This document shows, one piece after another, positions 4,465 to 57,850 of a stretch of 64,000 nucleotides of DNA. The position numbers and the translations under genes were made by a program. The notes under the pieces are model-generated. The model ran no database searches and was not told where the DNA came from. It saw only the letters and a list, made by a program, of their open reading frames with translations. Where the stretch lies: sequence record OQ722176.1; one strand, given 5' to 3'. The first letter of the stretch is position 1; each line of letters begins with the position of its first letter.

Positions 4465-4490
4465 AAAAAAGCGCAAATTAATGCGCTTTT
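4465..4490 (-). terminator. intrinsic terminator
   Basis: AAAAAGCGCA-aatta-aTGCGCTTTT. Confidence 0.8.
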
Positions 4491-4492
4491 GT

Positions 4493-5473
4493 TTATTTGT
4501 TGAGCGTGAACATAGTTACATCGCCTTGAGTTTCAAACGAAGGCTTGTACCCATGCTTGCTACCATATCGTTGGAATAGACGCTTGTACAATCTAACTCG
4601 CTTCTCATTCCCATCTTTGATTGATGTCGCGATTGTATTACAGTTGTATGTCGTTGCGAATTTAACCGTTTCGTTGACTACTGTAGCGAACACTTGAAGC
4701 GGGTTTTCAGACGCGGTTAAATCATTCGTCCAACTTCCCATGTATCGAACTTGAAAATGCACTTCAACGCCGCCAACTGACTCTGGCGGATTGAAATTGA
4801 ACAACTCGCCATTATCACCCCAATTAATATCGTGCGGTACTAGAATAACACGATATGTTTGTTGACCAATCTGAAATAGACCTTCAACTGGCTTTTTGTC
4901 ACCCTTCGGGTCATCGCCTTTCGGATACATTACTTTAGCAGGCTTGTCCATAGATTCAGAGAACAGACTAGATTCACTCAAGTTTACCGATGTTAGCCAT
5001 TCAGACCACGTCTTTTTATTGCCGATTTTAGCAAATGGGATGTCGTCATGATCTAGCCATTGAGCCGAACGGTCATAAGACTGAGTAGTGTTGAACCCAC
5101 GATAATCATCACCAACCCACAGCCATTTGTGGTGCCAGATCTGATTTACTTGACGTGGCTTAGAAACAGCACCGTCTTTGTAAGTAACCATTAAACCAGC
5201 CGCAGGTTCTTGAACAGTATCAAATTCAACTGAGTCATAGAACGCTACCCCACCTTTCTTGTAGTCAATGCGTACGATATTCGGTGTGAATTGTGGATTA
5301 GCAATAGAAACTTGCGTACGAGCATCAGCAACCATTTGCTTGAACTCGTCTGGTACGTAGTCAACGTGAACATATAATGAACCACCGATGTCTTTACCCA
5401 CGCCCCATTTGCTGCGTTTAATCGCGCTACCTTTGCGAGTTTTCAACGTCGCACGTTCAAAAATCATGTTCAT
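4493..5473 (-). CDS. two-domain late protein; N-domain resembles the accessory domain of phosphorothioation-associated methyltransferases; C-domain shared with ORF 49708
   Basis: GKDIGGSLYVH..NIVR..EFDT..QIWHHKWLWVGDDY..IGNKKTWSEWL; C-domain motif KRVRLYKR. Confidence 0.6.
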   Translation of the reverse strand: MNMIFERATLKTRKGSAIKRSKWGVGKDIGGSLYVHVDYVPDEFKQMVADARTQVSIANPQFTPNIVRIDYKKGGVAFYDSVEFDTVQEPAAGLMVTYKDGAVSKPRQVNQIWHHKWLWVGDDYRGFNTTQSYDRSAQWLDHDDIPFAKIGNKKTWSEWLTSVNLSESSLFSESMDKPAKVMYPKGDDPKGDKKPVEGLFQIGQQTYRVILVPHDINWGDNGELFNFNPPESVGGVEVHFQVRYMGSWTNDLTASENPLQVFATVVNETVKFATTYNCNTIATSIKDGNEKRVRLYKRLFQRYGSKHGYKPSFETQGDVTMFTLNK

Positions 5474-6063
5474 CGTCTTGCCTCGTTGGTAATGTTTCTG
5501 ATCATTCGTACTGCGAATTGAGTATCGCCTGTCATTGCTGCTGAAGCTGCCTTATCGACGTAAAACGTGCTATCTTCAATCATGTTCAGGTGATGATAGA
5601 TTTCGCGAAAATCATGTCGGTCGTACTCGCGATCATTGAATCGTAGTGCACCTGCTTTCTTGTCATCATCGTGAACACGCTTGTACTCATCAACGACGCG
5701 AATCATTTCAGCGGCGTATTTCTTCATTGTCATGTTGTCAAGCTTCAGTCTCTTAGCTGCTGCCATGACTTCTTCACGCGGTCTATCAAGCTCAATCGCA
5801 TCTTTTAGAATGTTCAAGCTGTGAATCGTGTCAACGGCTGACTTTTCCATTCTTAGTTTATGTTCTTCAAGAGAACGATTGTGCTTTTTCAATTCACCCG
5901 AAGCAGTTGCACCAGCAATTAAGCCCGCAAATGTACCCCAGAACCCACCTTTTCGTTGCAGACGTTTTTTAACCTCTCCCTTCGAACCTGCGGTCATTGC
6001 TTGAAATTGCGCCCATCGCCCGCTTTTTTTCGCTTTGTCCATTTCTGTTAAAAATTCAATCAT
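5470..6063 (-). CDS. putative internal head protein
   Basis: MIEFLTE capsid-targeting-like N-terminus; TCTAAATA promoter upstream. Confidence 0.55.
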   Translation of the reverse strand: MIEFLTEMDKAKKSGRWAQFQAMTAGSKGEVKKRLQRKGGFWGTFAGLIAGATASGELKKHNRSLEEHKLRMEKSAVDTIHSLNILKDAIELDRPREEVMAAAKRLKLDNMTMKKYAAEMIRVVDEYKRVHDDDKKAGALRFNDREYDRHDFREIYHHLNMIEDSTFYVDKAASAAMTGDTQFAVRMIRNITNEARR

Positions 6064-6088: not shown

Positions 6089-6097
6089 TATTTAGAC
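6089..6097 (-). promoter_or_regulatory. late promoter variant GTCTAAATA
   Basis: Same 9-mer precedes the inh-like operon and gene 34. Confidence 0.7.
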
Positions 6098-6104
6098 AGA
6101 AACG

Positions 6105-6132
6105 AAAAAAGGGCGACCGAAGTCACCCTTTT
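6105..6132 (-). terminator. intrinsic terminator
   Basis: AAAAAAGGGCGAC-cgaa-GTCACCCTTTT; TTCG loop on minus strand. Confidence 0.85.
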
Positions 6133-7617: not shown

Positions 7618-8130
7618 TTACCTCAGATAAGTAAAGCTGTTTGATTGGCGTTCATGAACCAGTAGTTGACCACGAAGTTTAACCCAGTGTTCAATAGTTT
7701 TCAGATCATGCGAATCGCGACGACCGATATGCCAGTCATGAATAATATCAGCCGAAAGCGGTTGATACATTTCATCACCCCGACGATAAGTAGGCATCCA
7801 CTTAGGCTTGAACTCGTCTTCGATTACAATCACTAGATCTTCGTCACCTAGCGGACAATCTAGTTTAATTGCGGTTAAATCGACTTCAGCCGCAATCTCA
7901 GCGTCTTTAATTGGAATCGCGTCTGATTCATCGACTAGATCGCATGTCGTCTTAGACTCGATTACAGTGCATTCTAGCGGCACATCAGAGTTGTTAACAA
8001 TTTCGTTAGACATTAGCTCTTCGATCATCTTGCTTTTAGTAAGTGCATTGTCGAGTTCAATGTCGTAGTGCTTCAACGCGAATTCAGCTACGCCACGTTT
8101 GGTTTGTTTCTTCAGATATTCAGTAATCAT
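7618..8130 (-). CDS. second Inh-like protein
   Basis: VAEFALKHYDIELD..TKSKMIEEL and C-terminal RGQLLVHERQSNSFTYLR parallel Inh; divergent from uvsW as T4 inh is. Confidence 0.65.
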   Translation of the reverse strand: MITEYLKKQTKRGVAEFALKHYDIELDNALTKSKMIEELMSNEIVNNSDVPLECTVIESKTTCDLVDESDAIPIKDAEIAAEVDLTAIKLDCPLGDEDLVIVIEDEFKPKWMPTYRRGDEMYQPLSADIIHDWHIGRRDSHDLKTIEHWVKLRGQLLVHERQSNSFTYLR

Positions 8131-8358: not shown

Positions 8359-8366
8359 TATAAATA
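8359..8366 (+). promoter_or_regulatory. T4-type late promoter for uvsW
   Basis: TATAAATA. Confidence 0.85.
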
Positions 8367-8376
8367 CAGTTATACA

Positions 8377-8385
8377 TATTTAGAC
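8377..8385 (-). promoter_or_regulatory. late promoter variant GTCTAAATA
   Basis: Divergent from the uvsW promoter; upstream of 8345/8130/7613. Confidence 0.7.
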
Positions 8386-49677: not shown

Positions 49678-49685
49678 TATAAATA
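49678..49685 (+). promoter_or_regulatory. T4-type late promoter
   Basis: TATAAATA upstream of 49708. Confidence 0.85.
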
Positions 49686-49707: not shown

Positions 49708-50589
49708 ATGATTATTTTTGAACACGACGAAACGTTAATTGAAGCGTTCGACCGACCTGTTCCATACAGATGGGATGCTATGCACAATGAAGCTAGTTTC
49801 ACAGTAGGCGGTACGCAATACATGGCAACAATTCAAGACCGTGACACGCCACGCGGTGTAAGCATATATGTAGCATTCCAACGAAAAGACCGCGAAACTG
49901 GTAATTGGACGCACACGCTTGCAAAGGGTTCGCCTAAAGATGCAATGACAGTATTGAGTACAATTCTAGCTGCTACGTTTGAAAAAGCCTCTGAAATTCA
50001 CCCAGATGAGATTACGTTCAGTGCGTATTCAGATGAAGATCGCAACGATGCAGACAAACGTTTCCGACTGTACAAGCGTATGGCAGAGCGATATGCAAGC
50101 AAGATGGACTACACGGTTCACGTTATGGGAAATAGCTTCACGGTTAAGAACAATAACCCGCCGAAAGTTCGCAGACTGCACAACGACGGTATTAAAAAGG
50201 ACGAAGAACTAACGTACGTCATTTTCCCGAATACTAACGCATTCACATGGGCTAAGTTATTCTGGCTAGACAACGACGGTGATTATATTCGATTTGCATT
50301 ACCACACGGTCGAGTTTACATAGAACGAAAATCAAGTGATGTTGTTCACATTGAAGCAACGACCCCACGCGGTAAGTTCAACCACTTAGATTCGGCTGAG
50401 ATTTGGCTATCAATGCTAGGTGATGTTACAGTTAAAACGAGGACTGGTCGTACATTCGAGATTTCAGAAAAAGGTGCGATTCTTGATGCAGGTGATATGA
50501 TTTTGTGTGAGCAAGATACATTGTATTACGTCGAATCAGAAGAAGATTTCAGCAATATCTGGGGCTATGAACTAGAAGATATTAGATAA
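49708..50589 (+). CDS. putative internal head protein; N-domain paralogous to C-domain of ORF 4493-5473
   Basis: TLIE|AFDRP; KRFRLYKR motif; own late promoter. Confidence 0.6.
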   Translation: MIIFEHDETLIEAFDRPVPYRWDAMHNEASFTVGGTQYMATIQDRDTPRGVSIYVAFQRKDRETGNWTHTLAKGSPKDAMTVLSTILAATFEKASEIHPDEITFSAYSDEDRNDADKRFRLYKRMAERYASKMDYTVHVMGNSFTVKNNNPPKVRRLHNDGIKKDEELTYVIFPNTNAFTWAKLFWLDNDGDYIRFALPHGRVYIERKSSDVVHIEATTPRGKFNHLDSAEIWLSMLGDVTVKTRTGRTFEISEKGAILDAGDMILCEQDTLYYVESEEDFSNIWGYELEDIR

Positions 50590-54022: not shown

Positions 54023-54262
54023 ATGATAACGATATACACAATTCCTAACTGTGACGGCTGTCGTCACGCTATCTCCCTCTGTAAGTTCAAAAACGTCCCG
54101 TATACTGTAATCGAGTTGCAGTCTCAATCTGACATCGACGAATTGCATAGAAAGCTTGGTGGTGTTCGTAATATTCGAGTTCCGCTTGCCATGCACGGTG
54201 ATACATACATTGGTCACCTGCCTGAATTAAAGCGATTTGTTGATAACCAGACGTATAAATAA
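54023..54262 (+). CDS. glutaredoxin
   Basis: YTIPNCDGC, VP, YIG. Confidence 0.88.
   Translation: MITIYTIPNCDGCRHAISLCKFKNVPYTVIELQSQSDIDELHRKLGGVRNIRVPLAMHGDTYIGHLPELKRFVDNQTYK
54254..54261 (+). promoter_or_regulatory. T4-type late promoter
   Basis: TATAAATA upstream of gene 24. Confidence 0.85.
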
Positions 54263-55747: not shown

Positions 55748-57193
55748 ATGTTAGGTAACTTTGACTCATTTCTGAGTGAAAATCGCCGTCAAACTCAGGG
55801 TGGAAAAATCTACCCTAAGTTTGGTCAAGTTATTGTTGAGCTAGGCACTGCTTCTACCGAGTTCAGCAAAGGCAAAGGCGTTGAAACAACTATCGGCATG
55901 ATGGAAAAGGCAAATGAGCTTAAATCTATCATGGTATCAAAACTTGCTGAAGATGTCAATGTTGATGAGAAAAACTTCGACATTAATCTAAGCGAGAACG
56001 TAAGCACCATCAACCTGCTTATGGAAAACGAATTCTTAGCAATGCCTGCTCATGCTCTACAGCAAGTTAAGTCAATGATCATGTGTACTGAAGCACGTCT
56101 TCCTAGTATCGTGATTAAAGGCGGTGATTTGAACGATGTAGTGACTGAAGCAACTAAGCTAGGTTACAAAAAATCAGACATTCACGTTGTTATCCCAATG
56201 AGTGAAATGAAGATCAATCTTGCAGATTCTGACAAGCTGATCATTGAATCACTTTCATTTGACGGTCTAACAGCGTCTGAAGTACTTGCGCAAGCTGCAC
56301 CAATCAATCTAGGCGACGTTTACGTTACTGTTGAAAGTGTGTCTAGCGACGCTCAACTTTCTGAAATGAAAGAAATCAAGATCAAGACAGCGAATCGCGC
56401 TATGACACTTGGCTCACTAAACCGCCATGTTATGGATCAATTTGTTGTTAAAGAAGCGAAAGACGTATCATACGCACGTGCTAAAGCTGAAGACAGTGGT
56501 CTACCAATGCTTGAAGGTTTCAAAGCGTACGATATGAAGCAGAAAATCACTATGATTGAACATGCTCAGAACGCATTCACCAAAGAAATTGCACGTGCTC
56601 CGCTTTCTGCTACAGCATGGCAAAATCTTGTAGATGTTAAAGAAGCTTATTTCGATAACGGTTGGAAACTGAAGCACAACAACACAAGCATCGTTCTGAC
56701 AAACGCTGGTAACGCTATGCGTGCTAATCGCGTGTGTGAAGAATATCGCGTTGAGCTATCAGAAGCAGGTTATCCTCTTCTTGATATGGTAGCAATGATG
56801 GAAAGTAAAGGCGCGACTCGTTTCGATTGTAAATCATTTGCTGAAGCAATGATGAAATTCGACGGTTGTGTTACGCCAGAACGTCAAACTGTTACTGCAT
56901 TCGTTACTGAATCAGCGGCAAATCGCGTGTTCCACCCTCAAGTGATGTCAAGCCTACGTCCAGTGACTGAAATGGTCGACGACGTTGACGGTCTTGTTCG
57001 TGCTCTTGCAAATGACCAGTTCAGTTCGTTTAAAGTAGCTCAGTCATTCTCGGAAGCAATGCTTGACCAAGAAACGCTTTACTCTATGATGGAAAGCATC
57101 GTATCTGAAGGCGTAGACGTATCAGTTGACGGCACTTTGATTGATTTCAAAGTAAACGATACGCAATACCACATTAACATCGACATCAAATAA
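55748..57193 (+). CDS. putative internal head protein with degenerate P-loop-like N-domain
   Basis: MLGNFDSFLSE start; YPKFGQVIVELGTAS..KGKG. Confidence 0.5.
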   Translation: MLGNFDSFLSENRRQTQGGKIYPKFGQVIVELGTASTEFSKGKGVETTIGMMEKANELKSIMVSKLAEDVNVDEKNFDINLSENVSTINLLMENEFLAMPAHALQQVKSMIMCTEARLPSIVIKGGDLNDVVTEATKLGYKKSDIHVVIPMSEMKINLADSDKLIIESLSFDGLTASEVLAQAAPINLGDVYVTVESVSSDAQLSEMKEIKIKTANRAMTLGSLNRHVMDQFVVKEAKDVSYARAKAEDSGLPMLEGFKAYDMKQKITMIEHAQNAFTKEIARAPLSATAWQNLVDVKEAYFDNGWKLKHNNTSIVLTNAGNAMRANRVCEEYRVELSEAGYPLLDMVAMMESKGATRFDCKSFAEAMMKFDGCVTPERQTVTAFVTESAANRVFHPQVMSSLRPVTEMVDDVDGLVRALANDQFSSFKVAQSFSEAMLDQETLYSMMESIVSEGVDVSVDGTLIDFKVNDTQYHINIDIK

Positions 57194-57202
57194 GGTGACA
57201 AA

Positions 57203-57850
57203 ATGAAAAAGTTCTGCAATTTTCTATCTGAAGTTCAGAAATACAGTTCAGCGGCTACGTCGATTCGTGGTAAAGAAGTTGCAGCGTTAGTTAAGTTGTT
57301 CAAGTCAGGCATGTTCACGCCTGGCGGAACAGCACTTGATTACGGCGCTGGCAAATACGGTCGTAACGCTGACTTCTTACGTAGCGAAGGTATCAAAACG
57401 TATGCATACGACAAATTCAATGGTACATCGGCAGATGGGTGGGAAGCTGTTAGCTTGACTATTCCAAATGGTGAGACTTTCGATACTGGCTTCACGTCAT
57501 ACGTATTGAACGTTGTACCTGAAGAAGTCGAAGCTGAGATCATCCGTGACGTTGAATCTCGTACACGTGGTAAAGTGTTCCACATTACTCGCGGCACTGA
57601 CATCACACAGACAGTTTTCAACGTGATTTCTGGTAAGTCTAAAAATGACGTAATGATGCAATTCATTGCTCAAGAATATCCAGAGATTCATGGTCAGATT
57701 GTCGCAGGTGGCGGCACTAAAGAACTTGCGAAAGAAATTTCCGAGCGCGGTGTGGTTACAGCTAAAGACAGTTTTCAACGTATCCCAGACTTGTCAAAGT
57801 ACGGTTACAAGAAATCTGGTTCAGGTGCTTCTGTAGTCTGGACAAAATAA
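57203..57850 (+). CDS. class I SAM-dependent methyltransferase with capsid-targeting-like N-terminus
   Basis: ATSIR..LDYGAGKYG..YAYDKF..FDTGFTSYVLNVV; MKKFCNFLSE. Confidence 0.85.
   Translation: MKKFCNFLSEVQKYSSAATSIRGKEVAALVKLFKSGMFTPGGTALDYGAGKYGRNADFLRSEGIKTYAYDKFNGTSADGWEAVSLTIPNGETFDTGFTSYVLNVVPEEVEAEIIRDVESRTRGKVFHITRGTDITQTVFNVISGKSKNDVMMQFIAQEYPEIHGQIVAGGGTKELAKEISERGVVTAKDSFQRIPDLSKYGYKKSGSGASVVWTK

What the first reader, a model, noticed from the sequence alone, without database searches (positions are those of the whole stretch)
4979..5473. Stand-alone copy of the accessory domain that bacteria fuse to the PT-associated methyltransferase
Seen: residues 1-165 read GVGKDIGGSLYVH..NIVRID..VAFYDSVEFDTVQEP..NQIWHHKWLWVGDDY..IGNKKTWSEWL. 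Established (from memory): the non-catalytic repeated domain of the dnd-linked MTase has GKxxxxALYVH..NIIK..ISYLxYPDFD..HP..PILHRKExFV..DYP..IGxxxxWxxxL. Inference: the phage carries both modules of that bacterial protein on separate late genes about 52 kb apart, which would be a Rosetta-stone split system, possibly a substrate- or modified-DNA-reader plus a writer.
Basis: partly seen in the sequence, partly recalled or inferred. Interest (0 to 1): 0.78.

Follow-up and report, generated by a model that had tools for sequence, protein, structure and literature searches.

The report
Split methyltransferase-partner domain in a vibriophage
A KVP40-like Vibrio phage encodes, on two genes 52 kb apart, the two halves of an uncharacterised methyltransferase-plus-partner-domain module that other phages, plasmids and bacterial phosphorothioation islands carry as one protein, so an unknown but very widespread enzyme pair can now be tested in a model phage.

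Summary
Window 4979-5473 (minus strand) encodes residues 1-165 of a 326-aa protein, the KVP40.0371 homologue in Vibrio phage vB_VspM_VS2. The domain gives no direct Pfam or NCBIfam hit. However, a profile of it aligns to residues 324-475 of genuine TIGR04096 proteins ([quoted passage not shown]) with hhalign probability 94%, E 9e-8. The family has at least 1013 sequence clusters. 55 of the 157 best members, including 36 of 38 giant "polyvalent" proteins, carry a class-I SAM methyltransferase directly next to the domain, in either order. One fusion protein (P0112) is 42% identical to the window domain and 42% identical to the window's 215-aa methyltransferase (57203-57850). A confident AlphaFold model (pLDDT 95) has no neighbour in the PDB. 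Both window genes lie behind late-promoter-like motifs and have N-termini resembling T4 capsid-targeting propeptides, which suggests delivery with the DNA. Not supported or not tested: that the domain is "repeated" in TIGR04096, that it is non-catalytic, and that it reads phosphorothioate DNA. The phage branch has an invariant His-His-Lys that the TIGR04096 branch lacks. The function remains inferred.

The parts
4979..5473 (-). N-terminal domain (aa 1-165) of the 326-aa protein. It belongs to the 'WHHKW' branch of the family whose sister branch is the C-terminal domain of TIGR04096.
   Evidence: domain HMM E 2e-56 on this ORF. AF2 model pLDDT 95.5.
4493..4978 (-). C-terminal half (aa 166-326 plus stop). 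This variable module is found only in schizo-T4 Vibrio phages and has a paralogue at 49708-50589.
   Evidence: Only weak hits to DUF6934 and phrog_6387.
5470..6063 (-). 197-aa gene directly upstream. Its stop overlaps the target's start, so it is a co-operonic partner. N-terminus MIEFLTE.
   Evidence: (phrog_16422).
6089..6096 (-). TCTAAATA, a one-mismatch variant of the T4 late promoter TATAAATA, about 26 nt upstream of the 197-aa gene's ATG.
   Evidence: The same variant lies upstream of the minus-strand cluster at 8377-8384.
6107..6132 (-). Terminator-like hairpin (11-bp stem plus T-run) that closes the preceding gene and bounds the two-gene unit upstream.
4467..4490 (-). Terminator-like hairpin immediately after the target's stop codon.
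57203..57850 (+). 215-aa class-I SAM methyltransferase (KVP40.0066 homologue), the separated catalytic partner of the domain. N-terminus MKKFCNFLSE resembles a T4 capsid-targeting sequence.
   Evidence: E 3e-43 to P0112; E 5e-29.
55748..57193 (+). 481-aa gene ending 10 nt before the MTase start (KVP40.0065 homologue). N-terminus MLGNFDSFLSE. Function unknown.
54254..54261 (+). Perfect T4-type late promoter TATAAATA upstream of the gene string 24 (head vertex) -> 55 -> 481-aa gene -> MTase.
49708..50589 (+). 293-aa paralogue of the target's C-terminal module. N-terminus MIIFE. A perfect TATAAATA lies at 49678-49685.
   Evidence: E 8e-9; E 5e-8.

Best explanation
Shown: residues 1-165 of the 326-aa protein form a compact alpha/beta domain of a large family that is not in Pfam and has no solved relative. 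The C-terminal domain of TIGR04096 proteins is a diverged sister branch of this family. Across phages, plasmids and bacteria the domain's recurrent partner is one particular class-I SAM methyltransferase, of the same type as the TIGR04096 N-terminus. The two are found fused in either order, as overlapping or neighbouring genes, or, in KVP40-like phages, as separate genes 52 kb apart (326-aa protein at 4493-5473, MTase at 57203-57850). Inferred: the two window proteins act together in trans as one modification module. The MTase is the writer, and the domain supplies substrate recognition or a second activity on the same substrate, most likely a nucleic acid. Also inferred: both are made late, targeted into the head by short N-terminal propeptides cut by the prohead protease, and injected with the DNA. 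This parallels the giant polyvalent proteins that carry the same dyad, and would let the pair act at the start of the next infection against a host defence. The substrate and the chemistry are unknown.
For: Homology: hhalign probability 94.4%, E 9e-8, 146 columns. Relatives of the domain hit TIGR04096 profile positions 285/320-474, and stand-alone domain proteins hit positions 325-484 of an HMM of true members. Partnership: 14 of 47 mid-size fusions hit TIGR04096 and 9 hit Methyltransf_23. 55 of 157 family members, and 36 of 38 proteins longer than 1100 aa, carry the MTase, with a median gap of 63 aa; 32 are domain->MTase and 23 MTase->domain. P0112 is 42% identical to each window protein (E 6e-34 and 9e-45). 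The MTase gene overlaps the domain gene in L006/L007 (E 3e-14) and lies one gene away in Photobacterium. 57203 is the only window ORF hit by the fused-MTase HMM (E 5e-29) and by the TIGR04096 HMM. Both genes are present in every complete schizo-T4 genome. Delivery: the giants carry LPD38, ART-PolyVal, MuF_C and DarA_C, which are hallmarks of injected polyvalent proteins (PMC5512222). F-[LI]-x-E within the first 14 residues occurs in only 3 of 86 window genes, and all three belong to these two gene units. The motif is conserved in KVP40 and fits the T4 CTS rule of targeting residues 4 and 7 and processing residues 8 and 10 (PMC9026906). Late-promoter-like motifs lie upstream of both units. Nucleic-acid context: in two planctomycete genomes a stand-alone copy lies beside DndB, PAPS_reduct, an SNF2 helicase, ScoMcrA_N and a true TIGR04096 gene.
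Against: No physical interaction or activity has been shown. The two window genes are far apart and in different transcription units. About a third of family members are stand-alone proteins, and some loci show no MTase within 6-8 kb (L005, L008, L016), so the domain can probably work alone. The phage branch has invariant H114-H115-K116 plus H36, E89 and S136, which looks like an active site rather than a passive binding surface. The TIGR04096 branch replaces the His-His with Phe-Arg, so the two branches may not do the same thing. Co-occurrence among cultured phages is confined to one clade and is not independent evidence. The CTS-like motif was noticed after the fact, and the looser [LI]-x-E that the target itself carries is common (25 of 86 genes). 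The MTase lacks the (D/N/S)PP(Y/F) motif of DNA amino-methyltransferases, which I read directly from the sequence.
Confidence: 0.6

Rival explanations
1. The domain is an autonomous enzyme or effector, for example a hydrolase or transferase using the invariant His36/Glu89/His114/His115/Lys116 cluster. It acts on its own, and the MTase is merely a frequent neighbour in multi-effector proteins.
For: 54 of 157 members are stand-alone proteins of 230 aa or less. Some loci lack an MTase nearby. The conserved positions are polar and aromatic, as is typical of catalytic pockets. The domain is also fused to unrelated effectors such as YafQ/RelE, PARP, GNAT and NlpC/P60. Polyvalent proteins are known to join unrelated activities (PMC5512222).
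Against: Within proteins of 3000-6000 aa with many domains, the MTase is almost always the immediate neighbour (median gap 63 aa, both orders). That is not expected for random effector shuffling. The architecture is also kept in TIGR04096, where the His-His is lost.
Confidence: 0.22
2. The pair targets RNA, probably tRNA or RNA ends, rather than DNA. The domain would be an RNA-binding module that directs the MTase, possibly to protect or repair tRNAs attacked by host anticodon nucleases.
For: Other fusion partners of the domain are RNA enzymes: CCA-adding/poly(A) polymerase with HD (2 proteins), NFACT-R (2), Tpt1/KptA (1) and YafQ/RelE (1). The P0112 fusion gene lies beside an RNA ligase, a SpoU 2'-O-methylase and an AAA_18 kinase-like gene. 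The MTase is of the Methyltransf_23/11 type, not a DNA amino-methyltransferase type.
Against: The bacterial sister family sits in DNA phosphorothioation islands with DndB, PAPS_reduct, SNF2 and ScoMcrA_N. The giants are rich in DNA methylases and SNF2 helicases. Other fusions involve ParB_N and zinc-ribbon plus T5orf172. Fusion partners in polyvalent proteins need not share a substrate.
Confidence: 0.2
3. One reading: the domain is a reader of phosphorothioate-modified DNA that guides the MTase to PT sites.
For: The sister branch is part of the PT-associated TIGR04096 family. In Rubripirellula and Stieleria, a stand-alone phage-type copy overlaps a ScoMcrA_N gene next to DndB and DndC-like genes.
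Against: There is no similarity to the known sulfur-binding domain or to any PDB structure. Most family members, including all phage and megaplasmid copies examined, are not in PT contexts. No binding data exist.
Confidence: 0.12
4. The resemblance to TIGR04096 is chance similarity of short motifs, and the two window genes are unrelated.
For: The window protein gives no direct TIGR04096 hit at E<=10, and the MTase scores only 11 bits against a cutoff of 150.
Against: The profile-profile match is significant and spans the whole domain. Three independent intermediates map to the same profile region. The fusion protein P0112 matches both window proteins at 42% identity.
Confidence: 0.02

Closest known systems
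TIGR04096 / dnd_rel_methyl (DNA phosphorothioation-associated putative methyltransferase, about 480 aa)
   Same: The two modules are of the same type. The N-terminal class-I SAM MTase carries D-Y-G-x-G and V-L-N-V motifs. The C-terminal ~155-aa domain is homologous to the window domain. Shared conserved positions include His36, an aromatic at 78, Phe84, an acidic residue at 85, Pro90, Lys116 and Trp156.
   Different: Here the modules are on two genes 52 kb apart. The ~165-residue helical middle region of TIGR04096 has no counterpart in the window. The phage branch has invariant Trp-His-His-Lys-Trp where TIGR04096 has Leu-Phe-Arg-Lys-Asp/Glu. There is no dnd context. Neither window protein reaches the family cutoff. 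TIGR04096 itself has no experimentally known function.
DarB-type adenine-methylase/SNF2-helicase dyad of polyvalent proteins (phage P1 DarB; Iyer et al. 2017, PMC5512222)
   Same: It is a methyltransferase tightly coupled to one particular partner domain. It is embedded in giant multi-effector proteins of phages and plasmids that are thought to enter the cell with the DNA, and it also occurs as smaller or solo versions.
   Different: The MTase class differs: class-I Methyltransf_23-like rather than EcoKI/TaqI-like with NPPY. The partner also differs: a 160-aa alpha/beta domain rather than a helicase. This dyad is not mentioned in the main text of that paper.
T4 internal head proteins (IPI-III, Alt) with capsid-targeting sequences
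   Same: Both have a short N-terminal propeptide with hydrophobic or aromatic residues followed by L/I-x-E, the prohead-protease site. Both show likely late expression, lie next to head genes (24, inh) and have a role in host take-over or anti-restriction.
   Different: There is no sequence homology in the mature parts. Packaging and cleavage have not been shown for the KVP40-type proteins.
Sulfur-binding domain (SBD) of ScoMcrA/SprMcrA, the known phosphorothioate reader
   Same: Both are linked by gene context to PT systems. A stand-alone copy of the domain overlaps a ScoMcrA_N gene in two planctomycetes.
   Different: No sequence or structural similarity was detected. The ScoMcrA_N piece that accompanies the domain is not the SBD.

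Membership tests
TIGR04096 (dnd_rel_methyl) | Whole-protein score at or above the curated cutoff of 150 bits | tested here: not met
   The target protein and its two halves give no hit at E<=10. The 57203 MTase scores 11 bits, E 0.13.
TIGR04096 (dnd_rel_methyl) | C-terminal ~155-aa accessory domain (profile positions ~320-474) | tested here: met
   hhalign A5 vs A6: probability 94.4%, E 9.2e-8, 146 columns. Intermediates P0122, P0099 and P0034 map to profile positions 320-463, 285-451 and 409-474. Solo domains hit positions 325-484 of an HMM of true members.
TIGR04096 (dnd_rel_methyl) | N-terminal class-I SAM methyltransferase in the same polypeptide | tested here: not met
   The 326-aa protein has no MTase part. 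The cognate MTase is a separate gene at 57203-57850.
TIGR04096 (dnd_rel_methyl) | Conserved helical middle region (about residues 155-320 of true members) | tested here: not met
   An HMM of 31 true members searched against all 393 window ORF segments matches only positions 14-93, on the 57203 ORF.
TIGR04096 (dnd_rel_methyl) | Neighbourhood of dnd/PT genes | tested here: not met
   The KVP40 annotation of both regions shows head, recombination and hypothetical genes and no dnd genes. The PT context is seen only for the planctomycete copies. The whole window was not scanned with Dnd models.
Unnamed 'WHHKW' domain family (N-half of phrog_16075) | Full-length match to the domain profile, with the invariant positions K27, H36, E89-P90, H114-H115-K116-W117, Y124, F127 and S136 | tested here: met
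   Domain HMM E 2e-56 on the window ORF. All listed positions are present in the window sequence.
Unnamed 'WHHKW' domain family (N-half of phrog_16075) | Association with the TIGR04096-type class-I MTase (fused, adjacent or in the same genome) | tested here: met
   55 of 157 are fused. The window MTase is hit at E 5e-29 by the fused-MTase HMM. P0112 matches both window proteins.
Polyvalent-protein domains (Iyer et al. 2017) | The domain recurs inside giant multi-domain proteins with LPD, ART-PolyVal, MuF, DarA and SNF2 modules | tested here: met
   38 of the top 157 hits are longer than 1100 aa. 12 giants scanned contain LPD38, ART-PolyVal, MuF_C, DarA_C, LPD3, SNF2 and DNA methylases. The window protein itself has only two domains.
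Polyvalent-protein domains (Iyer et al. 2017) | Identity with one of the published LPD1-40 domains | tested here: inconclusive
   No Pfam LPD family matches the domain. However, not all 40 LPDs are in Pfam, and the paper's supplementary alignments could not be read.
T4-type capsid-targeted internal proteins | N-terminal ~10-residue propeptide with targeting residues at 4 and 7 and a processing site of L/I at 8 and Glu at 10 | tested here: met
   The MTase MKKFCNFLSE (KVP40: MKQFCNFLAE) fits exactly. The 481-aa and 197-aa neighbours carry F-L-S/T-E. The target has only I-F-E at residues 4-6, and that loose motif is common.
T4-type capsid-targeted internal proteins | Presence in the virion and cleavage by the prohead protease | not testable with these tools
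   This needs virion mass spectrometry. No KVP40 virion proteome covering these genes was found.
Sulfur-binding domain of PT-dependent endonucleases | Sequence or fold similarity to the ScoMcrA/SprMcrA SBD | tested here: not met
   No Pfam hit, no PDB sequence hit and no Foldseek hit at E<1 with a pLDDT-95 model.

The most novel reading that the evidence does not exclude
The methyltransferase-domain pair is a backbone-directed modification system. The domain recognises a phosphorothioate or terminal/backbone phosphate, and the class-I MTase methylates that sulfur or oxygen. Phages would inject it to erase, mask or mimic the host's PT self-mark and so blind Dnd/Ssp-type defences, while bacteria would use the TIGR04096 version to tune their own PT marks. 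This would be a new chemistry for DNA modification and a new anti-defence principle. My evidence does not exclude it: the MTase is of a small-molecule/phosphate-methylating class, it lacks DNA base-methylase motifs, it is linked to PT islands, and the partner domain is rich in basic and aromatic residues.
Probability: 0.08. Interest if true: 0.9.

Novelty: new variant of a known kind. Interest (0 to 1): 0.64.

Why it matters
TIGR04096 has been a computational family labelled 'putative' since it was defined, with no known substrate and no description of its C-terminal domain. This work shows three things. First, that domain belongs to a much larger family of at least 1013 sequence clusters, absent from Pfam and with no PDB neighbour. 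Second, the MTase-plus-domain pair is a conserved two-part module of the giant injected 'polyvalent' proteins of phages and plasmids, making it a second methylase dyad beside the DarB type. Third, in KVP40-like phages the module is naturally split into two small, separately deletable genes. That makes a long-unassigned enzyme pair directly testable in a culturable model phage through knock-outs, virion proteomics, binding assays and methylation assays. It may also reveal a new counter-defence activity relevant to Vibrio phages.

Tried and rejected
1. Direct scans of the target, its halves and its neighbours against Pfam, NCBIfam and PHROGs gave only families of unknown function.
2. PDB sequence searches found nothing for the target, the family profile A1, the MTase, two mid-size fusions or two giants.
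3. Foldseek on a first, poor model (pLDDT 71) gave noise. With the good model (pLDDT 95.5) there was still no PDB hit, and BFVD returned only one other family member.
4. Attempts to obtain true TIGR04096 members via P0099 homologues and plasmid tblastn returned only the phage/Vibrio branch. True members came instead from the planctomycete neighbour gene.
5. The idea that the domain is repeated in TIGR04096 was rejected. hhalign and hmmsearch find one copy only, at residues 324-475.
6. I considered reading H-x-K followed by Asp as a phospholipase-D/HKD nuclease motif. I rejected this because the confident model has no fold match to PLD-family structures and the TIGR04096 branch lacks the His.
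7. I considered G-x-G-K-D as a P-loop and rejected it, because the model places those residues in beta-strands and Ser/Thr is missing after the Lys.
8. The MTaX1 methylase-associated domain could not be evaluated, since the library holds no usable description.
9. There is no exact TATAAATA directly upstream of either gene. Only a one-mismatch variant and an upstream-operon promoter were found.
10. A search for a KVP40 virion proteome found nothing relevant.
11. The KVP40 record's note of a PF05480 match for KVP40.0371 was not reproduced.
Full report
Where we are. The window is from Vibrio phage vB_VspM_VS2, 100% identical to OQ722176. It is a KVP40-like member of Schizotequatrovirus (Straboviridae). 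The finding lies in ORF 4493..5473 on the minus strand (326 aa), the homologue of KVP40.0371 and a member of phrog_16075, which has no assigned function.

Observation. An alignment of eight schizo-T4 homologues shows an almost invariant N-terminal 165 residues and a variable C-terminal half. The N-terminal part also occurs with different partners. It forms the N-terminus of a 332-aa and a 542-aa metagenomic protein, a 184-aa stand-alone protein, and the C-terminus of a 469-aa viral protein. It is therefore a genuine, mobile domain. Its profile finds 1013 cluster representatives at E<=1e-3 among 1.84 billion proteins. These are stand-alone ~160-aa proteins, mid-size fusions, and proteins of 3000-6400 aa with the domain in the interior.

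Is it the TIGR04096 accessory domain? Directly, no. The window protein and its halves give no NCBIfam or Pfam hit at E<=10. Through relatives and profiles, yes.
- 14 of 47 mid-size family members hit TIGR04096.
- In P0122 the single matching stretch is the domain itself: residues 26-165 against profile positions 320-463, E 6e-8.
- In P0099 it is residues 154-330 against positions 285-451 (E 6e-13), and in P0034 residues 414-479 against positions 409-474 (E 1e-4).

I then obtained genuine members. Next to a stand-alone copy of the domain in Rubripirellula amarantea and Stieleria lies a 486/485-aa gene. NCBI names it [quoted passage not shown], and it has more than 3500 homologues. hhalign of 50 phage-type domains against 31 of these proteins gives probability 94.4%, E 9.2e-8 over 146 columns, with domain positions 17-164 aligned to residues 324-475. 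Only one copy is found, so "repeated" is not supported. The two branches share His36, an aromatic at 78, Phe84, an acidic residue at 85, Pro90, Lys116 and Trp156. However, the invariant Trp-His-His-Lys-Trp of the phage branch corresponds to Leu-Phe-Arg-Lys-Asp/Glu in TIGR04096.

Is the 57203 protein the other half? Alone it scores only 11 bits on TIGR04096, but the link is strong.
- A phmmer search of the 215-aa protein against the domain-bearing proteins finds P0112. This 387-aa protein has the domain at residues 13-167 and an MTase at 199-374, matching at E 3e-43.
- By BLASTP, P0112 is 42% identical to the window domain (E 6e-34) and 42% identical to nearly the whole window MTase (E 9e-45).
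- An iterated HMM of this MTase finds it in 55 of the 157 best domain-bearing proteins, including 36 of 38 that exceed 1100 aa. It is almost always the immediate neighbour of the domain (median gap 63 aa), in both orders: 32 domain->MTase and 23 MTase->domain.
- The same HMM hits exactly one ORF in the window, 57203-57850 (E 5e-29). It also identifies the gene overlapping the start of the domain gene in contigs L006/L007 (E 3e-14) and a gene one position away in a Photobacterium megaplasmid.
- An HMM of true TIGR04096 proteins likewise hits only the 57203 ORF among 393 window ORF segments.
- Among 50,697 phage records, the domain occurs in 51 and the MTase in 49, all schizo-T4 Vibrio phages. 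The two records lacking the MTase are partial genomes. This co-occurrence comes from one clade, so it adds little independent weight.

What kind of proteins carry the pair? Twelve of the giants contain LPD38, ART-PolyVal, MuF_C, DarA_C, LPD3, SNF2/ResIII helicases and DNA methylases. These are the "polyvalent proteins" that Iyer et al. proposed are injected with phage or plasmid DNA (PMC5512222). That paper's main text describes one methylase dyad, the DarB-type adenine methylase plus helicase, and does not mention this one. The 2024 reappraisal of Dnd systems does not discuss the TIGR04096-type MTase either. Other partners of the domain in small fusions are CCA-adding/poly(A) polymerase with HD, NFACT-R, Tpt1/KptA, YafQ/RelE, PARP, GNAT, ParB_N and NlpC/P60, and zinc ribbons plus T5orf172 in L009.

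Structure. With a 50-sequence alignment, AlphaFold2 gives pLDDT 95.5 and pTM 0.89. The model has about eight beta-strands, one long helix (residues 42-58) and three C-terminal helices. Foldseek finds no PDB match better than E ~1 and TM 0.28. In BFVD it finds only a segment of another family member. No solved structure resembles it, including the known sulfur-binding domain.

Expression and delivery (inferred).
- The target gene overlaps the stop of a 197-aa gene. The two-gene unit is bracketed by terminator-like hairpins at 6132-6107 and 4490-4467, and is preceded by TCTAAATA, a one-mismatch variant of the T4 late promoter.
- The MTase starts 10 nt after a 481-aa gene, in the string 24 (head vertex) -> 55 -> 481-aa gene -> MTase, behind a perfect TATAAATA at 54254.
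- F-[LI]-x-E within the first 14 residues occurs in only 3 of 86 approximate window genes: the 197-aa gene, the 481-aa gene and the MTase. A control using positions 31-44 gives 0.
- The MTase N-terminus MKKFCNFLSE has an aromatic residue at 4, Phe at 7, Leu at 8 and Glu at 10. This fits the published rule for the 10-residue T4 capsid-targeting sequence and its gp21 cleavage after Glu (PMC9026906).
- These N-termini are conserved in KVP40 and recur in other phage contigs, but not in the bacterial megaplasmid copies.
- The target itself has only I-F-E at residues 4-6, which is weak evidence on its own.
- Its C-terminal half belongs to a small paralogous family confined to these phages, with 2-4 loci per genome. 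One copy, at 49708-50589, also begins MIIFE and sits behind a perfect late promoter.

Mechanism. What is shown is homology and a tight, order-independent evolutionary coupling of the domain with one MTase type. From this I infer that the two window proteins work together on one substrate, with the MTase as writer and the domain providing recognition or a second catalytic step. I also infer that they are probably delivered with the DNA to act early against a host system. Confidence is 0.6 for the partnership model as a whole, and lower for each inferred step. The substrate is open. DNA is favoured by the PT-island context of the bacterial branch and by the DNA-directed company in the giants. 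RNA or tRNA is suggested by several fusion partners and by the neighbours of P0112. The invariant His-His-Lys of the phage branch, and the many solo copies, keep open the rival view that the domain is an enzyme in its own right.

Classification. The window protein is not a TIGR04096 member. It misses the score cutoff, has no MTase in the same polypeptide, lacks the middle region and has no dnd context. It does carry a homologue of that family's C-terminal domain, and the phage also carries the cognate MTase. I rate it a new variant of a known kind, because the architecture exists as an uncharacterised family. The split form, the phage/polyvalent branch with its distinct motif, and the link between the two are, as far as I could find, undescribed.

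Noticed in passing
window 5470-6063 (-), 55748-57193 (+), 57203-57850 (+): These are the only three of about 86 window genes with F-[LI]-x-E in their first 14 residues (MIEFLTE, MLGNFDSFLSE, MKKFCNFLSE). The pattern resembles T4 capsid-targeting propeptides ending in a prohead-protease site. They may mark a set of head-internal, injected proteins.
   Followed up: partly
window 49708-50589 (+): A 293-aa protein beginning MIIFE lies about 22 nt downstream of a perfect TATAAATA (49678-49685). It shares a ~75-residue module with the target's C-terminal half (E 5e-8). tblastn finds 2-4 such loci per schizo-T4 genome, so this is a small paralogous family of unknown function.
   Followed up: partly
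L014:7715-8612 and L015:7715-8606 (Rubripirellula amarantea, Stieleria sp.): A 97-aa ScoMcrA_N-domain gene overlaps the start of a stand-alone copy of the domain. The pair is transcribed divergently from a true TIGR04096 gene and lies beside DndB, PAPS_reduct and an SNF2 helicase. This could be an undescribed accessory pair of PT islands.
   Followed up: partly
L009:193-2682 (contig binned as a Spirochaetota MAG): An 829-aa protein has the domain in its middle, followed by three near-identical repeats of a 'PYPG..PW.STCK.CGAVSKTI' zinc-ribbon-like unit and a weak T5orf172 match at the C-terminus.
   Followed up: no
L012:217-5395 (metagenomic contig carrying the fusion P0112): The MTase-domain fusion gene lies among an RNA ligase, a SpoU-type 2'-O-methylase and an AAA_18 kinase-like gene. 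This is an RNA-repair-like neighbourhood.
   Followed up: no
L010 (V. parahaemolyticus 882-kb 'plasmid'), L011 (Photobacterium damselae 599-kb 'plasmid'), L016 (V. coralliirubri contig): Very large non-mobilizable replicons of Vibrionaceae carry the fused or split pair among genes such as ndk, a PAAR protein, DNA pol III alpha, SIR2, RuvB-like, gyrB and topo IV. They look like megaplasmids or phage-plasmids rich in hypothetical genes.
   Followed up: no
P0112 residues 174-180 versus window MTase residues 6-12: The CTS-like N-terminus of the split MTase aligns with the inter-domain linker (DFVFES) of the fusion protein. The linker of the fused form might itself be a protease site that separates the two halves after packaging.
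   Followed up: no
L001 (KVP40 record, KVP40.0371 and KVP40.0376): The KVP40 record notes a PF05480 match for KVP40.0371 that current Pfam does not reproduce. It also annotates a second 'prohead protease inhibitor' (KVP40.0376; window homologue 7618-8130) in the same minus-strand cluster as the target.
   Followed up: no
window 8359-8384: A perfect TATAAATA on the plus strand and a TCTAAATA on the minus strand lie within 26 nt of each other, in the divergent intergenic region between the minus-strand cluster and the uvsW-side genes. This may be a bidirectional late-promoter region.
   Followed up: no
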